A DNA stretch of 63,444 nucleotides, the filler included, from Platydemus manokwari (lineage: Eukaryota), in the NCBI GenBank assembly GCA_037951405.1. It is 6 parts of 6 records of this genome, joined end to end, with 100 filler letters (N's around TTAATTAATTAA, not from the genome) between each part and the next. Parts side by side here need not be neighbours in the genome. Positions count along the whole stretch, not along the records: positions 50,105 to 63,444 come from JBBMOY011754729.1; 5 more parts are not named here. One strand, written 5' to 3'. Shown here piece after piece: positions 50,105 to 63,444 of the stretch. The notes below the pieces were generated by a model that saw only the letters and a list, made by a program, of their open reading frames with translations, searched no databases and was not told the origin of the DNA. The position numbers and the translations under genes were made by a program. Within the stretch, counting starts at the first letter, position 1; every line of letters starts with the position of its first letter.

Positions 50105-50122
50105 ATTACTATTATGATTATG

Positions 50123-50163
<41 letters not shown>

Positions 50164-50239
50164 CATTATCATAATCATAATTATTATTACATTAATTATT
50201 ATTTCTTATAATATCTTAAGACCTATCAAATCATATTAA

Positions 50240-50279
<40 letters not shown>

Positions 50280-50280
50280 A
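50105..50280. repeat. (ATT)n microsatellites at contig start
   Basis: Two ATT runs. Confidence 0.9.
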
Positions 50281-50343
50281 ATAATAATATTCACAAAATT
50301 AATTAAATCAAATCACAACTTAAACAAACCACATCAAATTAAT

Positions 50344-51450
50344 TTTTCATATTATTCAAAGGATATTATTGCATGAGGATACGCTCAAATTTCATAAATA
50401 ATACTGATCGAATATTGATTACTTGATCTATGAAAACATCTTATTGTTATTACATTCTTGTTTTAGCCCAAACGATTTAAAGCAGTGTCGTGAAGATAAA
50501 TATTTGGAACATTGTATTTGATGTTCTTAACAGCTCGCATTACAGCAACACGTGATTTTGGTTATCACGAACTTTATTAATGAATTTATCAAAAGCGATA
50601 TTGGAGTCACTTAATCTAACACTGACTTGGTGTGTGTAATTCGCTTATACGAAAATACGAGCGGTTTTCTCGCTCTTTGCTTAGCCATTTCATGGTAAAC
50701 AGTGGGTTATCAAGATATAAGTTGCACTATATGTTTCCAGCGAGAAGGGAATGTGAAGATGATGATAAAAATTCATCGATAATATCAAGTGGCTGGCTGT
50801 CAGATCTTGTGTTTATGGGTTATCTCCAGATCCTGTTTGCCATCAATCACTGAGTATGCTCGTTTGACAACACGCATCATTCATCGATGCATGAGAATGA
50901 TAAGCTACAATCTGAGGAGAAAATATACAATTTGATCTGGAATTCGCTATAGAGCCTAAACCAGCTCGCTGCTAATAGGTGTCGCACAAGATCGGCATTG
51001 AGTGAGCATTCCTCGACTCTTTCCAATTGATTTCCGGCGAGCTATTCTTTATCGAGAGCCTTAGAGCAGCCAATCTAGTTGGCGGTGGAAAACCCAGCTA
51101 CAATATCTTGCAATTGACAGACATACTCTGCTGGCCAATTGAGCAGACTGTCACAGCGGATGAGCCCTAATGCATCGGCATCGCGCCCTACTATTTAGAG
51201 AAATAGGAAGGCGCTGTGTGCCTTTTCTGAGGATGGGTGGTGCCGTTTCGTCCGCTGAGAGTTACAATCAAAAGCAGTTCCGTTCTCTAGCTAAGCCACT
51301 GTCGGTTTGGAATCCATTGTTCCACCAGCGGAAAACGCATCGAGATATCAGCTTCAGGTGGATATTGAATACTATTTTCTTACACACAAATGTAGAAAAT
51401 GTTCAATACTGACCTGAAAATTTTCCAGTACGGATATTATTCTGAAAATA
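50344..51450 (+). ncRNA. Candidate large structured non-coding RNA, 5' block (unknown family)
   Basis: GC-elevated, no credible ORF. Many nested helices with plus-strand G-U pairs, e.g. 51154-51163/51248-51257, 50963-50970/51036-51043, 51353-51418, 50665-50674/50739-50748 and 50628-50637/50870-50879. Folded by eye. Confidence 0.6.
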
Positions 51451-52329
51451 TTTATCCCCACATAATATCGATTTTTTTTGTTTGTTAAAATTTCGATGAC
51501 TGTTTTACTCTACTGCATATATGTATATATATATATGGTGCTGATATTCTCTTAATGGATTTTCTCCAATTATCGATTTCATCTTCTAAACCTAACCGAA
51601 TCAATTTCGCCAATGAACTTTGTTTCCACCTAAGAGACTTGCCACTATCTTTATTTGACTTGTAAACCAATAATTAAAACAAAATCAACTAATTCTACTC
51701 CTATATTAATAAACCACAGCACGGTGGAAACATTCAAAGTTCAACCGAAAACCAATTCATAGATATAAATTCATTTTTCTCGTTTTATAAAAATTTAATT
51801 TCTCCTCTGATTTAAACAAAACAACAGTTGTTTTAAATGCTTATTAAATAAAATGGAATTGCGCATGGATTGAATGTTGGGTGATGATTTTTTTTTTTAT
51901 TATTAAAAAAATATCAAATCCAATTGTAAGACATGACAATATGGTCAATTTAATTGGAATAGTTCGGGGTGAGGAAAGGGGAATGGGGAATGGGTTTGTT
52001 AGTAAGTTGATAAAAGAAATCCAGATGCAGTAGTAACGAAAAAAGAGGCATGATCTGATTTTAACGATAGCATCAAAGATGACAAAGGGAAATCACCAAA
52101 TCATTAGCGATAATTAACTCCATTTCATTCATTAATATCCAGGAGAAAAAATGTTACACAGATTCTGCAGAAAATAATGTTGATAAGTAGTTGAAATCAT
52201 TAGTTTAACCAATTTTGCAGTTCTAATTTAACAAATCAAGGCTTATTAATATTTTTTTGTTTTAATTTTATACACTGTAATATAATAGTGTGAAATCTTT
52301 CTTGTGGTTGGAAAAAAGTTGGGCTTGAA

Positions 52330-54180
52330 AAACACAGATTACGTAAGCAAACACAAAATCGACGCTGGTCGTAAACGATGAAGATATTCAAATGATCGTT
52401 TTCGTAATAAAAAACAAGAGATAAAGATCAGCAAGCGTTGATTTAGAATTGCACCGACCAATCCGTCCGTTGTGTCATCCAGGATCCCGGTTGGTGATTA
52501 TATTTTCGTACTTTGACAAAACAAAGCTGTTGCACACACACACGGCTTATAATTTCTAGCAGCTATGTCGATGATGGCTTTGAAAGAAACCTTGTCCAAA
52601 AATATCAATGAAAGCTGGTTTTTTGGTGAGATTGAATCTACAGAAATCATATCATGAGCATGGAAATTTTCCCCAACAAACAAAAGAATCAGTATGGGGA
52701 AAAATCGATTCTAAAAATATTTCCAATGCTCCCCCATTATTTGATACCACTTATGTATCATATATGCATTGTACTTTGACTGACCAACCGGAGATCCTCT
52801 GGGTTTCCGGGACTCCTATTATTTTCCCTACCCCATTCGCGTATATTATATTGAACAAATGATTTCTCCAACACCATGACATTCGGAATATTAGTCTGAA
52901 ATTCAATGAACTTTTCATAGTGATATCCAATGCCAATTGTTGGCATTCTTTATTTGTGCCATTTGCCAGAGTGATATTTACAATTGGAGGGGAAATCGTT
53001 GAGTAAAAATGGCAGAATAGTGATTGTGATATGAATTTACTTTCATTTTATAGGAAAATCGGATCAATGCTCCAATAGGATCTATAGGAAGTAGTCAACT
53101 GAAATGGAAATGGTACCCGGGATTGGGTCCCCCATTCTTGTTCAAATGACATTGATTGATTTCATTCCCAATCAGCGAGATTTATTCACGTGTTGCGTGG
53201 GCGAATCTCGCTTGTTGGTGATCAATGTCACGACATATTGACAGGATAGAACCCACTAGGGATCAAAATTGAAATTAATATAACAAAAATACCGAAAAAC
53301 AATACAATGAAGTATTTCATGTTAACTGCTGATAGCACGAATGAATCTGCAACGTGACTTGCTAATTATAGGATTTACATGATATGTGTGATATGATGGA
53401 GTAACACCATTGAATTCCTCAACAGATCATCTTGACGGTATTTTTATTTTCACGTTTTCTTCTTTCTCTTCTTCCTTTACAGACAATTTGAATTAAATTC
53501 TGTCACCGATGGCATGATTTGCTGAACACAGCACAAGTGGACTCATTCTTTTATATTCAGAATTTATTCAAAAATTATTTTGTTTATTCGAATACAGAGA
53601 TTAATATTAGAAAAATCGATATTCTCGTAGTCTTAAAATTTTTTAAAAAATTATAAAAAATTGAAAAAACTAAAGATTTTCTATCAGAGCAGCAATGAGA
53701 GATAGGAATGGATATTAATTTTTATTCCGACGATGTAAATCTGGTAATTATAGAAATTAGTTCTTGTAATATTCGGTTTCCATGGTGATAGAAATTTCTG
53801 TGGATCATTTGATAAGCGAAACGAACTTGCCTTGGTGGAAAATATTGATTGATTTGAAATATATTTATCAATGAAAATCCAAGACCTACGCCTGGCTTTT
53901 GTGAAAAACATTCCACCGGTGGAGTTTCAGACAATCATAATCTCAGATTTTTGAGAGAATTAAAGAATTTAATATTCTTCAATAAACATTACCGGTGAGA
54001 CTGAAAAATGGTAGAATTATCGAAGATGACTTTTGACTGTGAGATGTGTTTTGATTTATGGTAAAGGGATCATGCAATTAGATTGAGTTCTCCATCATTG
54101 ATTTTCGACAAACACGTATCCCATAAGCCATTTTCGTTGTCAATCAATTTTCTACCGATGTCAGCCAGACTCCAATGAAA
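52330..54180 (+). ncRNA. Candidate structured non-coding RNA, 3' block (possibly the same transcript)
   Basis: Long hairpin 53147-53230, branched stem 52656-52731, and hairpins 52788-52810 and 52929-52947. Wobbles again favour the plus strand. Confidence 0.5.
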
Positions 54181-54767
54181 TAGCTATTTATTGAACATAA
54201 AAATTTACCCTTTTCCTTAATAATTTTCATATAATACTAGGAATAATGCCAAAGTGACATCTAGGGGTTCAAGGGTACCATAGCAACGATTATAAAAAGC
54301 ATATTTTCCAAAATAAATAATGAGACTGAAAATTATTGATAAGGAATCAAAATTACAAACAACCCTCTCATAACGCTGCCAATTCATTCTATGGTTTGGT
54401 GAGATGATCGTGTTTAGAAAAGCCTGGACAATAAGTTGATCCCACAACGCTGTTAGAACAACTTGACTGTGCTAAAGAAGGGTTGACTACATATAGGAAT
54501 GAAAATATTATTGATTTCTATCAGATCCTATTTTCAATGAATATATTTTATTCCTCTTGATTGAATGACTTGAAAAACCCTTTTTACTTTAATTTCCCCA
54601 ACAAGATAATTTTCGTTGAAAATTTCAAACAAAACTCAATAGGTTTTCCATAAATGGTTTCTTCTCCAATTGAAAAAGACAACAAGCAATTCATCATAGA
54701 TTTATTAAATTTATTAAAGAAAGGTGAAATTACAATATACAATTTGAGACCCTCATTTGAGGAGCAA

Positions 54768-56189
54768 TCACAACATCTCTGATCGTTTTTGTGAATGAGA
54801 AAAGAAATTGTTTTGATTTTGCTGAGGATAGAGATGTGAATATTGTTTTGTATCTTGGCAGCTGAGCTGGTTCGGTATATCAATGTGGTGGAAAAAACCC
54901 TGTTGATACAGAGGATGGCTCTGGATAAGAGGCATTCCAATATTAGAGGGGTATTGGCTAATGCTAGGATTGTTCTGGTGATCATCAGCTGATCCGTCTG
55001 TACAGTGGCCAGGATATGACTGCAAAGGCATCGAAAATAAGCCCGCAGTTGCAGTGTGAGCTAATGACCAAATTTTTGGTTTCACCTCATTGATTTTGGA
55101 CGAAAAATTCGTTTTCGCTAACATTACACAGAATATGAATATAATGTCATAATATTATAGGAATTACCTGTGATATCATCATGATCAGATAGGGTATCTA
55201 GTTGGCAGTCTGTTTTCAAACCGTCATCGGAGTCGGCATCTTTGCATTTTGTATCCGTTTCTTGGTCGGAATTCGTTGCATCATCGCTGCGATTTTTTGG
55301 TGACCAAGTCATTTTATTCTCTTTTTTCAGTCGCCTCCTAGCATTGGCAAACCACGTCGAAACTTGAGTGAGAGTCATTTTCGTGATTATAGCTAACATT
55401 ATCTTTTCTCCTTTGGTCGGGTAAGGGTTCTTAATATGTTCTTGGAGCCAAGCTTTGAGTGTGCTTGTGCTTTCACGAGTAGCGTTTTTGCGACGAGCGC
55501 TGTTTAAATCGAGAGTAGGACTGAAAATATGGATAAAACATTTGAAATTTTGGAATTTTTTTTGCTGGACAAAACAAAGTTGTTGATTGGTAAAATTATT
55601 AATCCCCATCAATCAATAAATATCAATAAATCTAAAAATTACTTTCCAATGTATCCGTATGGATTTGCCCATGCAGAATTATCATAACTTGCATATGGGT
55701 TGTGATCACCTGCCATCATGTGAGCGGCCGATCGCCATGCAGTTCCAAAATCGCAACACAAATGGTTATTGTTACCAAATGTATGAGTCGATGAATAAAA
55801 CGGAATGTTTGTGTTTGGTGATATACTATCAGGTCCAAATGGAGGCGGTGGCGGTGGCGGTTGTTGTTCTGCGCTGGTTATTGACGAAACAGTACTGGCG
55901 TCCGTGGAATTGAGATTACTTTGGTTAGGAGATGTCGATGGGTGTAATGATGACAGTAATCTCGATTGGGCAGCCGCTGCATAAGCTGGATTATAGAGAT
56001 TTAGTAGAGACGATGGGTCGTTATTGGGATGAGACTGGAGATTGGAATAGTTAAATATCGGATTGATCTGATCTTGAATGCCACCAGGTAAAGAGATCTG
56101 AAGAATTGATATTCAAGTTTTTCAAAACAAAATCAAACCCATACCTGTCCGGGAATACTGTTGATCAGGCTTGAATACGCACTATTCAT
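54768..56189 (-). CDS. irx: Iroquois-class TALE homeobox transcription factor; 4 exons: 56189-56145, 56097-55643, 55520-55168, 55117-54768 (400 aa)
   Basis: Homeodomain [64 protein letters not shown], acidic linker and IRO box [12 protein letters not shown]. All three GT-AG introns (47, 122 and 50 nt) keep the frame. Confidence 0.95.
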
Positions 56190-56499
56190 GGTAAATAAGG
56201 TCTAGAAATCTTGGACAATTTATTGAGTTCTCAATTATCAATATTAAATCAACCACTGTTCTATCGATTCTGATTATGTTGTACTAATTTGTTATTTCTT
56301 GTTTACAACCTGGTTTACAAGCAAATACAATATTTGACCCGACTAACAAGCTAAATAGGAAGTGGAAATCGCATCCCAATTCGCTAGCTATCAAAACATG
56401 ACACATCACCAGCGCTCTTGTCTTCATTGGAATATTGTAACAATTCTCGTTACACACATACTGACACACTTATCTCAAATGGTTATTGTCGGATATATT

Positions 56500-56545
56500 T
56501 GAAGAACCAATCAAATCGTGCAATTTTTCAACCAATCATATTTCT
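56500..56545. promoter_or_regulatory. Paired CCAAT boxes in the putative Irx promoter
   Basis: aaccaatca occurs twice about 25 bp apart, roughly 320-350 bp upstream of the Irx ATG. Confidence 0.4.
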
Positions 56546-59348
56546 TCGCTGATTAAACAATTATTTTTAATTTTTCGAAGCAGATTATTGATTTTTCTCA
56601 CTGTACATTTATTTTGATTTATATTTTGATAATGATTTTAAATTGAAATCAAATTGATAAAAAACGGTCCAATAATATTATATAAAATAAATTCCAATCA
56701 TTGTGAAAGATGCAAAAAAGATTGGTACGTTATGTAATAAGGGATTAATTAACTTTATTCACTGGCACACTTAGCGACATACTTACCAGACGCCTGTTAT
56801 TACTTAAGGTTGAACGTGTGCTTGAATCCTTTTTAGAGATATGGATCAAAAATAACCATAATTAAACGGATTAGATAGTTATCGCTTTGAAAATTTTAAA
56901 AATCTATTAAATCACAATCGGAACGTTTCGAGATGAAATAATAAAAAAATTAATTATAATAAATTATAATTATAATTATCTATGAAGGAGAAATCCATTA
57001 GTTTTTGATTAAATTTATTTTTGAAATTATCTGACAAGATTGCTCACTAATTGTCAGTAATGTTAATATATGAATATATTAATGTGAAATTCATTGCTTA
57101 ATCGATATAAAAAACAAAAATAAATAATTAAATCGCTTAAAAAGTCGTATTGAAAGGTAATAGTTTAATCTAATAAGTCGAAATGTTTTATGGAATCATT
57201 CACGATAATCTTAATATTATGTTCTCACCAATCCATAACCAGTTCCAATATCATAGCAATAACTTCAAATCATGAGCTGATATACAGCAAATCTCTACTC
57301 TAATATTAAATACAACTGATAAGAAAGTCGATGTTTGAGATCTACTTTCTGAAATTGCAGTTTTAGAAGTAAAAATCAATGAATTTATTCATCGATAGAT
57401 TTATATTAATAATGGACGAAATATTTTTTCCAGTTACGCCATGACATATTTCGATTATTGAAAAGGATATTCGAAATTTTTTTCATTGATTTTATAGGAT
57501 CTTAATCGTGTAAAATATCGATATATCGATTTCTAAAAATCGTGGAATCGTTAATAGATTATTGATGGAAGGAATCGATTGATTGTAATGACCACCCCAC
57601 TCCGGTGATTAGCTACAGCAATCCTGATATTTTAATGAGTGTTAATAATAATAAAATATAATTTTTTAATATCTGATCCACTTAATAAATAATATGTTAA
57701 CGAATAAAGAAATATGATTAAAATCATCCACCACGAAGTCGTAATATTAACGATAATCCCGTAATATTAGTCTATAACGGACCAAATAATTCAGGTTTTT
57801 AATGATTTTTATTATCATACAATAATATAATGGTGGGTTTCGATTTGTTAATCATAATAACCCTCAATTTTGGACAACTGGATGACAATCATAAATAAGT
57901 ATCTCAAACATCATCATTTTCAGTCTACTGTCTCATTTCATCTTCACATTCATTCCATAAATACCGATGATTCTATCTCTAACCTGTCCTGTTAGAATGA
58001 TTGTCGATCACAAAACATGAGTTTGAAATGTAGCATTGATAAACCATAATCGCAGTCATGTTTTCAGTTGGTCATCATAATATGTCGGAACATGACAATA
58101 TTATATTTAGCTCTGGCTATGCTTTCAACGCCAACTATTTTCAAATCAGATAAACCATATCTACGATCTATCGACGAAACTACGCGTTTATACCAAAAAA
58201 AATAATTCACCTGTACACATATCTAATCGGTCAATAGTTTTTTGTATCTATGGTAAGTAGTGGTTCTGCATGTCAATCCGATACACGAAACTATTCTCAT
58301 ACACTCATAATTTTCTTGATCACGTTACCAAACCGTAATGGTGAAATATTGATAGGTTATATTTATTTATATTCATTAATTCAAATGGTAATGGGATTAG
58401 GATAATTGAATTAGTCAATGTCCGACCACCTTTGTTCATTACATCATGTGGGATACTGTGATCCGTGAAATATATAGCATAATTCTCGATATCTACTACT
58501 ATGCCATATGATAATTTACGCCGATGATTGTTGGCATATGATAATTAAAGTTGCTGTTAGTGATAATTGATAGTGGTATGCGAACTGATGAGGACCAGTG
58601 TCTTTGGAAAATTTTCGGTGGGGGGAGATAATGATCCTACTGCATCGGATGGAGAGAGAAAAAAAAAACCGATCAGTGGTGGCTGCTAAATATTTTTTCA
58701 CAGTTCGTGTGAATAAAAAGAGACCGAGTCTGGTTTTTTTTTCCTTCTTTTAGCAATAATGAATGATAGGGCAATTATGATATTTAGCTTTTTCTTCGGT
58801 TAATTAGCAGTGGCCGCATTGGGTAGATCAACTGTCGATGATGATTTCCTGAGAGAATACAAACTAGCAGATGAGCAATTCTGTCTGTTGGGAAATTATG
58901 TTGCAGGACTGTTAATTATCAGCTACTATCAGTCAGTAGAGCTCGCTACAACTTACCAACAAGGATTACCAAAAGGTGAGATAAGACGAATGTACAACTG
59001 GTGTTGACAGTAATTACTGATGGGCAGTCAGTACTCTCATATGATATGCTCAATATCATCTTTGAACTTATCTAATTATAATTTATTTAATTGCTCCCCG
59101 TTTTTTAAGGTTTGAGATTGAGAATATTTTTTCCGTTTCGAACCATATATTCAATGCTGATGTCGCAATGTTGATTCCATCAGCATATATCCATGATCGG
59201 ACGAAAACCAATCGATACCTTTCCGTGAAAAATACGCCAATGCTTGCCCACGTCTGTGATAAATTTGTAAATAAGTGGAGATATTTAGGACAGCTTCAAT
59301 AATATTTTGTATTTTGAGAAATTTTATGGAACGTTATATATTTGTTTA

Positions 59349-59548
59349 CCTTATTTTCCGGACTATAAGGCGCGCATCATAACTATGAAATTAAATATAA
59401 AATGTAGAGTAAGATTTAATGCTCTTCATCATCTAATATGTCACACTCGATTATATTAACATCATCACTATCTTTTTTGATAATATTCCAGCCTTGATAA
59501 ATCCGAAAAATCTGTTTTAAGGGGACCCTTATAGTCCGAAAAATAAGG
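59349..59548. mobile_element. 200-bp pogo-type MITE
   Basis: TIRs ccttattttccggactataagg / ccttatagtccgaaaaataagg, flanked by TA on both sides. Confidence 0.9.
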
Positions 59549-62500
59549 TAGATATTTACAATAATTTCGTGGGCTACCAATCAGAAATTTATTATGCAGA
59601 AAGTAAATATTTATTATTATATTCTTGATATATCAGATTTAATAAAAATCTTTTTCATGGTTTGAAAATGTTGTGGATAAATAATCATTTTCCTTTCGAT
59701 TATGTCATCAATTACGGATATCAGTCACAAATGCCTTTTTATCGTGATCAAGTTGGACGCATGTGATAATTTTCTGTTTCGATTTTTTTGGAAGGCTTTC
59801 CATGAAAAACGACAATCGATAAATATGCCATATTTCCATAGTGATGCACTTCAAATTAATTACCATTCATTAAAACAATTTTTCATTAGAATTATTCTCG
59901 GTGTTTTATATTGAGAGCGATAATCTGTACTTTCATTGAAATTATCAATGAATTTCTGCTTGATCCAGACAATGGAAAAGCAAAAAGAAGTGATATATTA
60001 TTCTCGGAAGTAACTTAATGGAAGAAATGAACGACAAAGAAAAGAAAAATACTTCCATCGATTGTTAGATTTCAACAGCTCAAAAAAGCCAATTTCCGCA
60101 TGCCATGAAGAAATGTGAGTGCCTGTGTGTGTGTGTGCGTCTATAATTACTGAAATCAGTGAAGTATACGGTAATAATTGTGGAGGCACCGATTTTGGCA
60201 GTTGGGATATAATTTTTGTGCTTCAAATTCTTCGTACGAGCGAACACTTGCTTGATGCACATTAAGTAGTGAATGTAATGAAAAATCTGTCTTCGTTAAT
60301 ATCAAGGGATACATCACAGAAAATTGGATTAGTAAAATAGATTGGCAATTAGCAGAGTGAACACATTTATTTCCGAGCGGTGTGGATTTCACCTTTCAAT
60401 ATCGGCTGTACTTACACGGTTAAAAATTGCTATCCAATTTAAAGGGTTGAAACAAATCATAATGATGATTATCATTAATAAATATCAGTACGGGAAAATC
60501 ATTCGTTTCAATGCGATCCATTTTGAAACAATTTAAAATCGTTTCTCGGGAATTTTTTACAGAATTAATAATGAGTCTGTGAATTTCTGTGGTGCTTGTG
60601 AGAAATGTTTGTCTATAAAAAATTTTTGTCAAAAAAACTCTCCGAGAAAATCGAGGACAAATATCCAGGTCATCATTTTCACATTATCAAATCTTTTAAC
60701 TGGGGACATATACTACTGAGAGACTTTATCAGCAGTAGAAAAGGAAATGTTTTCATTTAGATCAAAAGCTATAGATTTATGTTTAAAGTACTTTTATCAT
60801 GTCTTTAATCCAGTTTTCTACCAATCATCATCATTTACTTTCACCGATAAATTGACATATTTCGAAATTTTTTTTCGTTGCATGTTGTGAAATTGACAGA
60901 CAAAAATTTTGAAGCCCAATTGACGGAAATGAAAAGAATATCAGCCTTGACAATCATCGTGAAGTGACTGCTCATCTATCACTAGTTGCCTTGAGAGGAG
61001 GATAAACTCAGTACACAAGCAGTGTCTTGAAATCAAAGTTAATAATACAACTCGAACTTATCGGATGACATGTGTAAAAAATTTATGAGGTCAACTGTAG
61101 CTGACCACTTGAACGTATGTCATGTAGTCAATTTCATTGAGAGAGTTTTATCCGTTGAATTGTGATGTCTTATATGAAATTAATATATCTATATTCGCGT
61201 AAGACTGTATGCAGCCCTTTAGGCTTTGTCTCTAGAAATGTACTTCTATGTAGTCCGAAAGAAGATGTCAATGTTATTCTAGTTTCTTATAACTCTTTAA
61301 ATATGTGGTTTTAGTAAAGGACTTTCAGTTATGAGAAGTTCAATTACTAAGGGAAATTTATAATAAAATGTATGCTAAATTTATTTTAATATAAATCCTT
61401 GTAATGTACAAACTCGATTCCTTAAAGTTAATGTTCTTCATGCTTGGCTTTAAATTGTTCTTCCTTGAAGCTTACAATCAACGACTACCTCCTTTACTTT
61501 ACCGAATCCTATATTTACCGAAAAACACTGTTTTCTGACCGTCTATGTCCTTTAGCGAAAACGTATTAATATCCTTTGGTTTAAAGATATTGTACTATTG
61601 GTACTCTCTAAGGTGCAATATTATATGAGCTAAAGTTATATATTTTTAAATCGGAAGTAATGTTATATCTGAAAATAACCGTTAATATTTTATTAATAAT
61701 TGATCAATGTTTCGATAAATGGCTTAATAAATTCGCTACCAACACCCAAACTTAATAGGCTCTAATTTTCTTATCTGACTTGTTATTATATAAAAAGTTC
61801 TCACTGATAACAACAACTCATCTATTTAAATAATTATATATTATGTAGGTTAAGGTGTAACCCCAAATTATTAGTTAAATATTAATAAACGTGAACTATG
61901 TGCCTTCACCTATTATGGATTAACTAACATAGAAACTCTTTCTGGTTGTATAACAAACCTCTCAGTTACTGATCTCGTTGCTGCGATCCCCAAATACCAA
62001 CAACTACACCAGCTGATTCTTACCATCGATTACTGTTTTGTTTGAATGGCAAATTTCTCAATTTGACAACTTCTCGTATGGCAATTTATGCACGATATTA
62101 CCATGGAGATCAAATCAACATTTATGATGAAATATTTATTTGATATTGTAATTCATTGTTTTGATAAATATATTTGCACAATTTATTTTTCATCATTTCA
62201 TTAAAACCTTTTCCCATTATTAATCGACTTTCATTTTACGTTCCTGACTCTAATGTGATCTTTGTTTTTTGTTTTAATTTATAGATTTATTTATTTATTT
62301 GATGATTTTTTTTTTATTATTTTATTTTATTTATTTATTTATTATTAATACCTCTATCGATTATTTTATTCGTTTGAGATCATCAATCAATCAATTTATC
62401 AAATAATAAGACGAGTTTTGTTTTATTAAATTAATATTGGGGGAAAATTTTCAATATATCAGACAAACAAAAAATTAACGAAACACTCGAAAGGAATGAA

Positions 62501-63019
62501 TTTATTTCGAATCGAATTCTGAAATGACCATTCGGGGATGAAATATCACACTTATTAAAATTGTTAAAAGAATAGAAATCAAATTTCTCAATGGGAGTTA
62601 TTCGATATTTTTCAATTTCGACCTGATAAGCGACTCGAATATCATTTTGATCAACTTCTCTTGTTGAAATGTGTGGAAATCCGTATTGAGACAAAGTGGA
62701 AATCATCGAATTTTTGTCATCAGATGATAAAATCGAAAAACAAAGAAATCCTTCACATTATCAGTTGTAGAATCGAAATGGAATTTTATCCCAATAATTA
62801 TTGATCATTTTTGTTTTAATAGTTTATTTAAATATTTTTATATATCGTTTATTGTTTTATTATTTAATGAATTCATATTTTAATATTATTTTTCAATGCC
62901 GTTTTAATCAGCTCGATTAATAGTTGAAGTATTTCAGTTCAGCGAGGAATCCGCAGTTAATGTTATTCACAGCCTGCTTGTTATAGATTTCGTGATATTT
63001 ATGGACAAGTATTAAAACA

Positions 63020-63300
63020 AAAACGTATAATAATAGATATTATTAATTAATATTATTAATTATTATTATCATTATTATTAATATAATAATAATTATTATT
63101 ATTGTAGATATTATTAAAATAATTAATATTATAATTATTATTGATATAATTATAATTATTTTCACTACGAACATAAATATTGCTATCATTATTATTAATA
63201 TAATAATGATTGTTTTTGTTATGATTATTATTAATAATAATACTATTATTAGTATTATTGTTAATATAATGGTAATGATAATTAATTAATTAATTAATTT
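63020..63300. repeat. AT-rich low-complexity (ATT/AAT) tract
   Basis: Degenerate trinucleotide repeats. Confidence 0.8.
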
Positions 63301-63444
63301 TTCATATGTGTTACAAGGTTTATTCAATACAAATTTGTTGGATTATTGGATTGATTGTGACCTGCTGGGGTCTGAAAGCTTTGATTCTAGAAGTCATTTT
63401 TGCATTTTCATTCATTCATCTCGGCTTTTCGTTGGGTTGGAATT

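What the first reader, a model, noticed from the sequence alone, without database searches (positions are those of the whole stretch)
50344..51450. ~1.1 kb multi-domain structured RNA of unknown family, convergent with Irx
Seen: a non-coding, GC-elevated island that is almost fully tiled by compatible helices. The 5' domain is closed by cattcttgt 50453-50461/atgagaatg 50891-50899. It contains cagtgtcgt 50483-91/gcgatattg 50595-603, gataaat/atttatc, tggtgtgtgt 50628-37/acacgcatca 50870-79 and tgtcagat 50798-805/gtttgaca 50862-69. The 3' domain is closed by ctggaa 50937-42/ttccag 51423-28. It contains gctatagagc 50946-55/gttctctagc 51282-91, agctcgct/ggcgagct, gccaa-tctag-ttggc, tgacag/ctgtca with tctgct/agcaga, and cagcggatga/tcgtccgctg enclosing ggcat/gtgcc, gcgcc/ggcgc and ctattt/aaatag. 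Non-Watson-Crick pairs are nearly all G-U on the plus strand (A-C on minus), so the folded molecule would not be the Irx 3' UTR. Inference: a functional large ncRNA. I cannot match it to rRNA, snRNA, RNase P/MRP, SRP or group I/II introns.
Basis: partly seen in the sequence, partly recalled or inferred. Interest (0 to 1): 0.88.

Follow-up and report, generated by a model that had tools for sequence, protein, structure and literature searches.

The report
GC-rich folded island downstream of Irx
A GC-rich, non-coding stretch 3.3 kb beyond a developmental (Iroquois) gene has a few real hairpins and may be an unannotated structured RNA gene, but the proposed 1.1-kb two-domain fold is unsupported, and neither relatives nor transcript data could be found to prove it.

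Summary
The named helices exist, and 50961-51360 is the most GC-rich 400 nt of the piece (0.50, above the Irx exons), with no coding signal. Folding support is uneven. The 3' half has z -3.0 (+) against -1.6 (-); the 5' half has z -0.9; the whole has z -2.6 (+) and -3.0 (-). The signal rests mainly on one hairpin (51353-51418, z -5.8 on both strands) and one 104-nt domain (51154-51257, z -3.3). The G-U strand argument is not significant (15 vs 8, p=0.18). No Rfam, phage, plasmid or viral match was found. No orthologous DNA or RNA run was reachable, so covariation and expression are untested. Best reading (0.35): a plus-strand snRNA-type gene ending at a T8 tract, most like an expanded 7SK (partial (UGAUC)2 motif; 7SK itself about 0.1). 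Close rival (0.30): an Irx enhancer. Telomerase RNA fails its template test.

The parts
50361..50369 (+). Candidate 5' end (GGAUAUUAU). It can pair with 51462-51469 to close the whole molecule, like 7SK M1/SL0.
   Evidence: 8-bp helix, p=0.65; start site is inferred, not mapped
50390..50435 (+). Weak AU-rich hairpin with a (UGAUC)2 repeat (GAUC at 50406 and 50425), resembling the 7SK HEXIM site
   Evidence: Motif found. The GAUC/GAUC register is isoenergetic with the MFE but has p=0.26; z -1.9. The loose grammar occurs 5 times in the piece.
50483..50603 (+). Local branched domain of the 5' half (hairpins 50506-50527 and 50551-50569)
   Evidence: z -3.4 (+), -0.8 (-), with boundaries chosen post hoc. 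Closing helix p=0.37 in the full ensemble, 0.98 with span limited to 300.
50616..50682 (+). Segment resembling human telomerase RNA (CUAACACUGAC, then UUUUCUCGCU 49 nt later). Rejected as a template.
   Evidence: the human motifs are recalled from memory; no TTAGGG template of 8 nt or more
50788..51055 (+). Predicted central arm pairing the 5' half with the 3' half (50803-12/50984-93; 50825-32/50934-41; 50788-99/51035-46; 50776-82/51049-55)
   Evidence: p 0.67-0.98, but shuffles give as many confident long-range pairs
50961..51360 (.). GC peak (0.50 over 400 nt), the highest in the 13.3-kb piece; non-coding
51115..51153 (+). Hairpin UGACAG/CUGUCA with UCUGCU/AGCAGA. As DNA, its arms are TALE-type TGACAG sites.
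   Evidence: p 0.82-0.99; TGACAG 3 copies vs 0.5 expected
51154..51257 (+). Best-defined GC-rich domain, closed by CAGCGGAUGA/UCGUCCGCUG, with inner helix 51176-83/51238-45
   Evidence: p 0.94-0.99; z -3.3; strongest stem of the region, -21.5 kcal/mol
51353..51418 (.). 66-nt imperfect hairpin, pre-miRNA-like, equally stable on both strands
   Evidence: z -5.8 (+), -5.7 (-); no Rfam miRNA match
51472..51479 (+). T8 tract ending the longest T5-free stretch of the piece (50348-51471); candidate Pol III terminator
   Evidence: six internal T4 runs argue against simple Pol III read-through
54768..56097 (-). Iroquois (Irx) homeobox gene, last three exons 56097-55643, 55520-55168, 55117-54768 (homeodomain, IRO box). 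Context, convergent with the finding.
   Evidence: tblastn of P0121: 82-93% identity per exon, GT-AG borders; Homeobox_KN homologues

Best explanation
A stand-alone, single-copy structured RNA gene on the plus strand, of about 1.1 kb (about 50361 to the T8 tract at 51472), whose GC-rich core is 50960-51420. It would act as an snRNA-type protein scaffold. The closest working model is an expanded 7SK: a 5' hairpin with a UGAUC/UGAUC repeat binds a HEXIM-like arginine-rich protein, the 5' and 3' ends pair, the oligo-U end binds La/LARP7, and the complex holds P-TEFb inactive. Shown: GC peak, no coding signal, local hairpins, a modest folding excess, the motifs and the T8 tract. Inferred: transcription, strand, ends, long-range fold and every protein partner. 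Confidence 0.35 for a structured ncRNA gene here, of which about 0.1 is for 7SK itself.
For: GC 0.50 over 400 nt exceeds the Irx exons (best other window 0.45) in a piece of about 0.32 GC. No ORF or Pfam signal. Ensemble energy lower than 31 of 31 block shuffles. 3' half z -3.0/-3.7 on + against -1.6/-2.1 on -. Well-defined domain 51154-51257. Longest T5-free stretch, ended by T8. GGAU start, (UGAUC)2 hairpin 45-65 nt downstream and a 5'-3' helix, as in the published 7SK signature 'two GAUC in a hairpin, poly-T end' (PMC5389472). Flatworm 7SK was only tentatively identified, with a non-conserved 3' stem (PMC2770079). No other contig at 80% identity or more over 50300-51370 (weak).
Against: The 5' half has z -0.9. 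The whole-region z is not strand-specific. The folding excess rests largely on one strand-symmetric hairpin. No Rfam match, including 7SK and Arthropod_7SK, even on small sub-windows. The (GAUC)2 register has p=0.26, lacks the U at the stem junction, and the loose motif occurs 5 times in 13 kb. No SL4/M8-like hairpin before the U-tract (z -0.15). Six internal T4 runs, which terminate Pol III efficiently elsewhere (PMC8406779). No transcript or covariation data.
Confidence: 0.35

Rival explanations
1. A constrained cis-regulatory DNA element (3' enhancer of Irx). Transcription factors, among them TALE proteins at TGACAG sites, bind clustered and partly palindromic sites; selection on these keeps GC high, and inverted sites create incidental hairpins.
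For: It lies 3.3 kb downstream of a developmental homeobox gene; Irx genes are known for distal enhancers (own knowledge). TGACAG 3 vs 0.5 expected and CAATTG 3 vs 0.5 (not corrected for the higher GC or for the 16 motifs tried). Folding is not strand-specific. Region-wide local folding is ordinary.
Against: 400 nt at GC 0.50, above the exons, and a 104-nt branched domain at z -3.3 are more than site clusters usually give (inference). The 3' half leans to the plus strand.
Confidence: 0.3
2. Relic of a mobile element or other foreign insertion, or an untranslated exon of a neighbouring gene beyond the piece edge (50105). The GC and hairpins would be inherited rather than selected as a stand-alone RNA.
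For: Imperfect inverted repeats (11 bp 50495-505/51446-56; hairpin 51353-418) and a MITE-like element nearby (59347-59550). The piece ends 240 nt upstream, so a neighbour cannot be seen.
Against: No second copy at 80% identity or more in the run's contigs (weakened because the source contig itself was filtered out). No target-site duplication around the 11-bp repeat (sequence). No protein, phage, plasmid or viral similarity.
Confidence: 0.2
3. A pri-miRNA locus: only the 66-nt hairpin 51353-51418 (either strand) is functional and is cut by Drosha and Dicer; the rest is flanking primary transcript.
For: z -5.8, a long regular stem, and UGUG in the loop on the minus strand. A second pre-miRNA-like hairpin lies at 53166-53221.
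Against: No Rfam miRNA match. Short loop and short basal stem. It does not explain the GC peak upstream. Comparable hairpins occur every 3-4 kb in the piece.
Confidence: 0.08
4. The missing flatworm telomerase RNA, with a template at 50616-50626 and a vertebrate-like pseudoknot at 50659-50682.
For: 9 of 11 match to the human template, and UUUUCUCGCU at human-like spacing (motifs from memory, pattern built post hoc). It is the top-ranked pseudoknot of that type only under relaxed thresholds. Flatworm TR was not found in a 2020 search (PMC8480181).
Against: No template of 8 nt or more for TTAGGG on either strand; the candidate would write TTAGTG. P2b needs three G-U pairs and P3 is 5 bp about 270 nt away. 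No H/ACA domain seen at the 3' end. No Rfam telomerase match.
Confidence: 0.02

Closest known systems
7SK snRNA (Rfam RF00100, Arthropod_7SK RF01052)
   Same: GGA at the candidate 5' end, a UGAUC/UGAUC repeat in a 5' hairpin with an A-U pair below, 5'-3' end pairing, oligo-U end
   Different: About three times the human length; AU-rich, unstable 5' hairpin; C instead of U at the bulge junction; no SL4/M8 hairpin; six internal T4 runs; no covariance-model score
Animal telomerase RNA (template-pseudoknot + H/ACA; RF00024)
   Same: Short sequence echoes of the template and J2b/3-P3 at similar spacing
   Different: No valid TTAGGG template, pseudoknot marginal, no H/ACA domain
Conserved non-coding enhancers around Irx homeobox genes
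   Same: Position downstream of Irx; clustered TGACAG and palindromic sites; non-coding
   Different: Conservation and chromatin marks untested; unusually high GC and a folded core
pre-miRNA hairpins
   Same: 66-nt regular stem-loop, z -5.8
   Different: No family match; short loop and basal stem; embedded in a larger GC island

Membership tests
7SK snRNA | Two GAUC in a 5' hairpin framed by U (UuGAUC/uGAUC) | tested here: inconclusive
   UGAUC/UGAUC at 50405/50424; register p=0.26; junction base is C, not U; 5 loose matches in 13 kb
7SK snRNA | M1/SL0 pairing of 5' end with the 3' region | tested here: inconclusive
   50362-69/51462-69, AU-rich, p=0.65, but directly before the U-tract rather than before a 3' hairpin
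7SK snRNA | Conserved 3' hairpin SL4/M8 before oligo-U | tested here: not met
   Only a weak hairpin at 51430-51472, z -0.15
7SK snRNA | Pol III unit: PSE/TATA promoter, poly-T end, no internal terminators | tested here: inconclusive
   T8 at 51472 and no internal T5, but six T4 runs; no convincing TATA or PSE by eye; flatworm promoter consensus not available
7SK snRNA | Rfam covariance-model match | tested here: not met
   none at E<=10
7SK snRNA | Binding of HEXIM, LARP7, MePCE | not testable with these tools
   needs immunoprecipitation
Telomerase RNA | Single-stranded template of more than one telomere repeat (8 nt or more for TTAGGG) | tested here: not met
   Longest match within the finding is the 6-nt CCCTAA at 51165; the species' telomere repeat could not be checked
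Telomerase RNA | P2b/P3 pseudoknot with U-rich loop | tested here: inconclusive
   only under relaxed thresholds, as 1 of 66 candidates
Telomerase RNA | 3' box H/ACA domain | tested here: not met
   no ANANNA hinge between the two 3' hairpins (read from the sequence); no Rfam match
RNase P / RNase MRP RNA | CR-I and CR-V forming the P4 pseudoknot | tested here: not met
   no CR-I on either strand; one lone CR-V-like match at 50550 inside a hairpin; no Rfam match
tRNA / tRNA-Sec / rRNA / snRNA / snoRNA / SRP / group I-II intron / hammerhead | Rfam, ARAGORN or core-motif match | tested here: not met
Structured ncRNA in general | Compensatory covariation among orthologues | not testable with these tools
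   no orthologous DNA reachable
Structured ncRNA in general | Discrete transcript | not testable with these tools
   no RNA run holds the region
Irx enhancer | Open chromatin, conservation, reporter activity | not testable with these tools
   only motif counts were possible
Transposon / MITE | Multiple copies, terminal repeats with target-site duplication | tested here: inconclusive
   no copy at 80% or more, but the source contig was filtered out; no TSD seen

The most novel reading that the evidence does not exclude
A lineage-specific, roughly 1.1-kb structured RNA outside every Rfam family, with a branched-rod fold pairing its 5' half with its 3' half: either a wholly new class or the long-unidentified flatworm counterpart of 7SK in a greatly expanded form.
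Probability: 0.2. Interest if true: 0.8.

Novelty: new variant of a known kind. Interest (0 to 1): 0.4.

Why it matters
Flatworm 7SK and RNase MRP were only tentatively identified (PMC2770079), and flatworm telomerase RNA was not found (PMC8480181). A real large structured RNA here would give a testable candidate for pause-release control in a regeneration model, or a new RNA class. If it is an enhancer, it is an ordinary but useful Irx regulatory element. At present it is a lead that one BLAST against related genomes plus one total-RNA track would settle.

Tried and rejected
Rfam on the whole piece and four sub-windows: nothing near a gathering score. ARAGORN: none. Six-frame pieces in Pfam, plus the 82-aa ORF in the ESM Atlas and viral contigs: nothing. 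blastn against phages and plasmids: only one 34-nt hit at E=0.3. Stem-arm pattern in viral and prokaryotic genomes: 68 hits, all chance (interior identity at most 0.36, nhmmer blank). Synteny through Irx: the only close relative, P0121 (UniParc UPI00060D35F8, 88% in exon 2), has no contig on record. P0123-P0126 are distant proteins with two homeodomains; the loci of P0125 and P0126 (L121, L122) show no similarity. The window's own ORFs are not in the collection. Full-text paper search with six sequence words: none.

Full report
Context. The piece (50105-63444) is AT-rich animal DNA bounded by ATT microsatellites. It carries an Iroquois homeobox gene on the minus strand. tblastn with its only close relative, P0121, places three exons at 56097-55643, 55520-55168 and 55117-54768, at 82-93% identity and with GT-AG borders. 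P0121 is an unnamed UniParc entry with no contig, so the organism was not identified; a flatworm is an inference. The finding lies 3.3 kb beyond the Irx stop. Several minus-strand AATAAA signals sit within 600 nt of that stop, so the finding is unlikely to be Irx 3' UTR.

Observation. The six long helices checked letter by letter are present as written, and the inner ones were located by sequence. The region is non-coding: the longest stop-free stretch is 82 codons, and no Pfam, Atlas or viral match was found. The GC elevation is real only in the 3' part. The window 50961-51360 has GC 0.50, the highest of the piece and above the best Irx window (0.45), while the 5' half has 0.36.

Is the folding more than chance? 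Partly. The 3' half scores z -3.0 on plus and -1.6 on minus, and a fixed 500-nt tile gives -3.7/-2.1. The 5' half scores -0.9. The whole 1.12 kb scores -2.6 (+) and -3.0 (-) against global shuffles, and -1.9/-1.5 against 100-nt block shuffles. Its ensemble energy beats 31 of 31 block shuffles. The excess is concentrated in a 66-nt hairpin (51353-51418, z -5.8 on both strands) and a 104-nt domain (51154-51257, z -3.3). Without the hairpin the 3' half falls to z -1.15. A 120-nt scan shows the region as a whole is not exceptional (mean z -0.5 vs -0.2), and three other places in the piece reach z below -4. Counts of strong stems and of compatible nested stems reach only about the 90th percentile of shuffles, so 'tiled by helices' is close to what any such sequence gives.

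When enforced, it is 21 kcal/mol above the MFE, and its long-range closing helices have probability about 0. Only the local elements survive: 51069-83, 51115-53 and 51154-257 at p 0.76-0.99, and 51353-418. The ensemble instead predicts a branched rod in which the 5' half pairs with the 3' half: 50362/51469, 50622/51351, 50742/51287, 50776/51055, 50803/50993 and 50825/50941. Shuffles yield as many confident long-range pairs, so this fold is also only a hypothesis. The G-U argument for the plus strand is partly circular. Counted strand-symmetrically it gives 15 G-T vs 8 A-C (p=0.18): a lean, not a result.

What it is not. Rfam gave nothing meaningful on the piece or on four sub-windows, and ARAGORN gave nothing. 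Core motifs of RNase P/MRP, hammerheads, group I/II introns and snR30 are absent. Phage, plasmid, viral and prokaryotic collections gave only chance hits. Laying the only run's contigs showed no other copy at 80% identity or more over 50300-51370, but the source contig itself was filtered out, so single-copy status is only weakly supported. That run is not on record as RNA.

Two family leads were pursued. Telomerase RNA: flatworm TR was not found in a 2020 search (PMC8480181), and 50616-50674 echoes the human template and J2b/3-P3 (motifs from memory, pattern post hoc). But no TTAGGG template of 8 nt or more exists on either strand, the pseudoknot is marginal and no H/ACA domain is seen. Rejected, about 0.02. 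7SK: the stretch 50348-51471 is the longest without T5 and ends in T8. A GGAU at 50361 is followed by a UGAUC/UGAUC hairpin (50405-50428), and the ends can pair. This resembles the published signature (PMC5389472), and the schistosome candidate also lacked a conserved 3' stem (PMC2770079). Against it: the hairpin is weak (p 0.26), the junction base is C rather than U, the loose motif occurs five times in 13 kb, SL4 is missing, six T4 runs lie inside, and the Rfam models do not score. It therefore fails membership as tested; 'works like 7SK' stays a hypothesis of about 0.1.

Verdict. A real, GC-rich, non-coding island with a few robust local structures. A plus-strand structured RNA gene is narrowly the best reading (0.35). 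An Irx enhancer is nearly as likely (0.30; TGACAG and CAATTG each 3 vs 0.5 expected, uncorrected). Then come a mobile-element relic or an untranslated exon of an unseen neighbour (0.20) and a miRNA hairpin (0.08). Neither expression nor covariation could be tested, because no orthologous DNA or RNA data were reachable. Interest 0.4; the novel reading has probability about 0.2 and would deserve 0.8.

Noticed in passing
window 53166-53221 (+): Pre-miRNA-like hairpin, -29.5 kcal/mol, z -5.2, much better paired on plus through G-U pairs (-22.9 on minus); no Rfam match. Candidate lineage-specific miRNA or palindromic relic.
   Followed up: partly
window 59347-59550: 37-nt inverted repeats at 81% complementarity, 130 nt apart (fold): a MITE-like element upstream of Irx.
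   Followed up: partly
window 58430-58929 and 59020-59200: Further hairpin-rich stretches: 120-nt z about -4 on plus. The 500-nt z of -5.1 from 14 shuffles shrank to -1.95 with 100 shuffles.
   Followed up: partly
window 51586-51597: CTAAACCTAACC just downstream of the T8 tract contains a 9-nt TTAGG-type and a 10-nt TTTAGG-type template-like repeat; probably chance in AT-rich DNA.
   Followed up: no
window 55168-55117: Irx has a very short intron of 50 nt between the homeodomain exon and the IRO-box exon; the next intron upstream is 122 nt.
   Followed up: yes
P0123-P0126, L121-L122: Database Irx proteins with two homeodomains (two from 'UNVERIFIED_CONTAM' Acipenser contigs) look like fused gene models and outrank true homologues in the search.
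   Followed up: partly
window 50759-50853 (+): A perfect box C (ATGATGA) with a CTGA about 90 nt later, but no terminal stem and no Rfam snoRNA score.
   Followed up: partly
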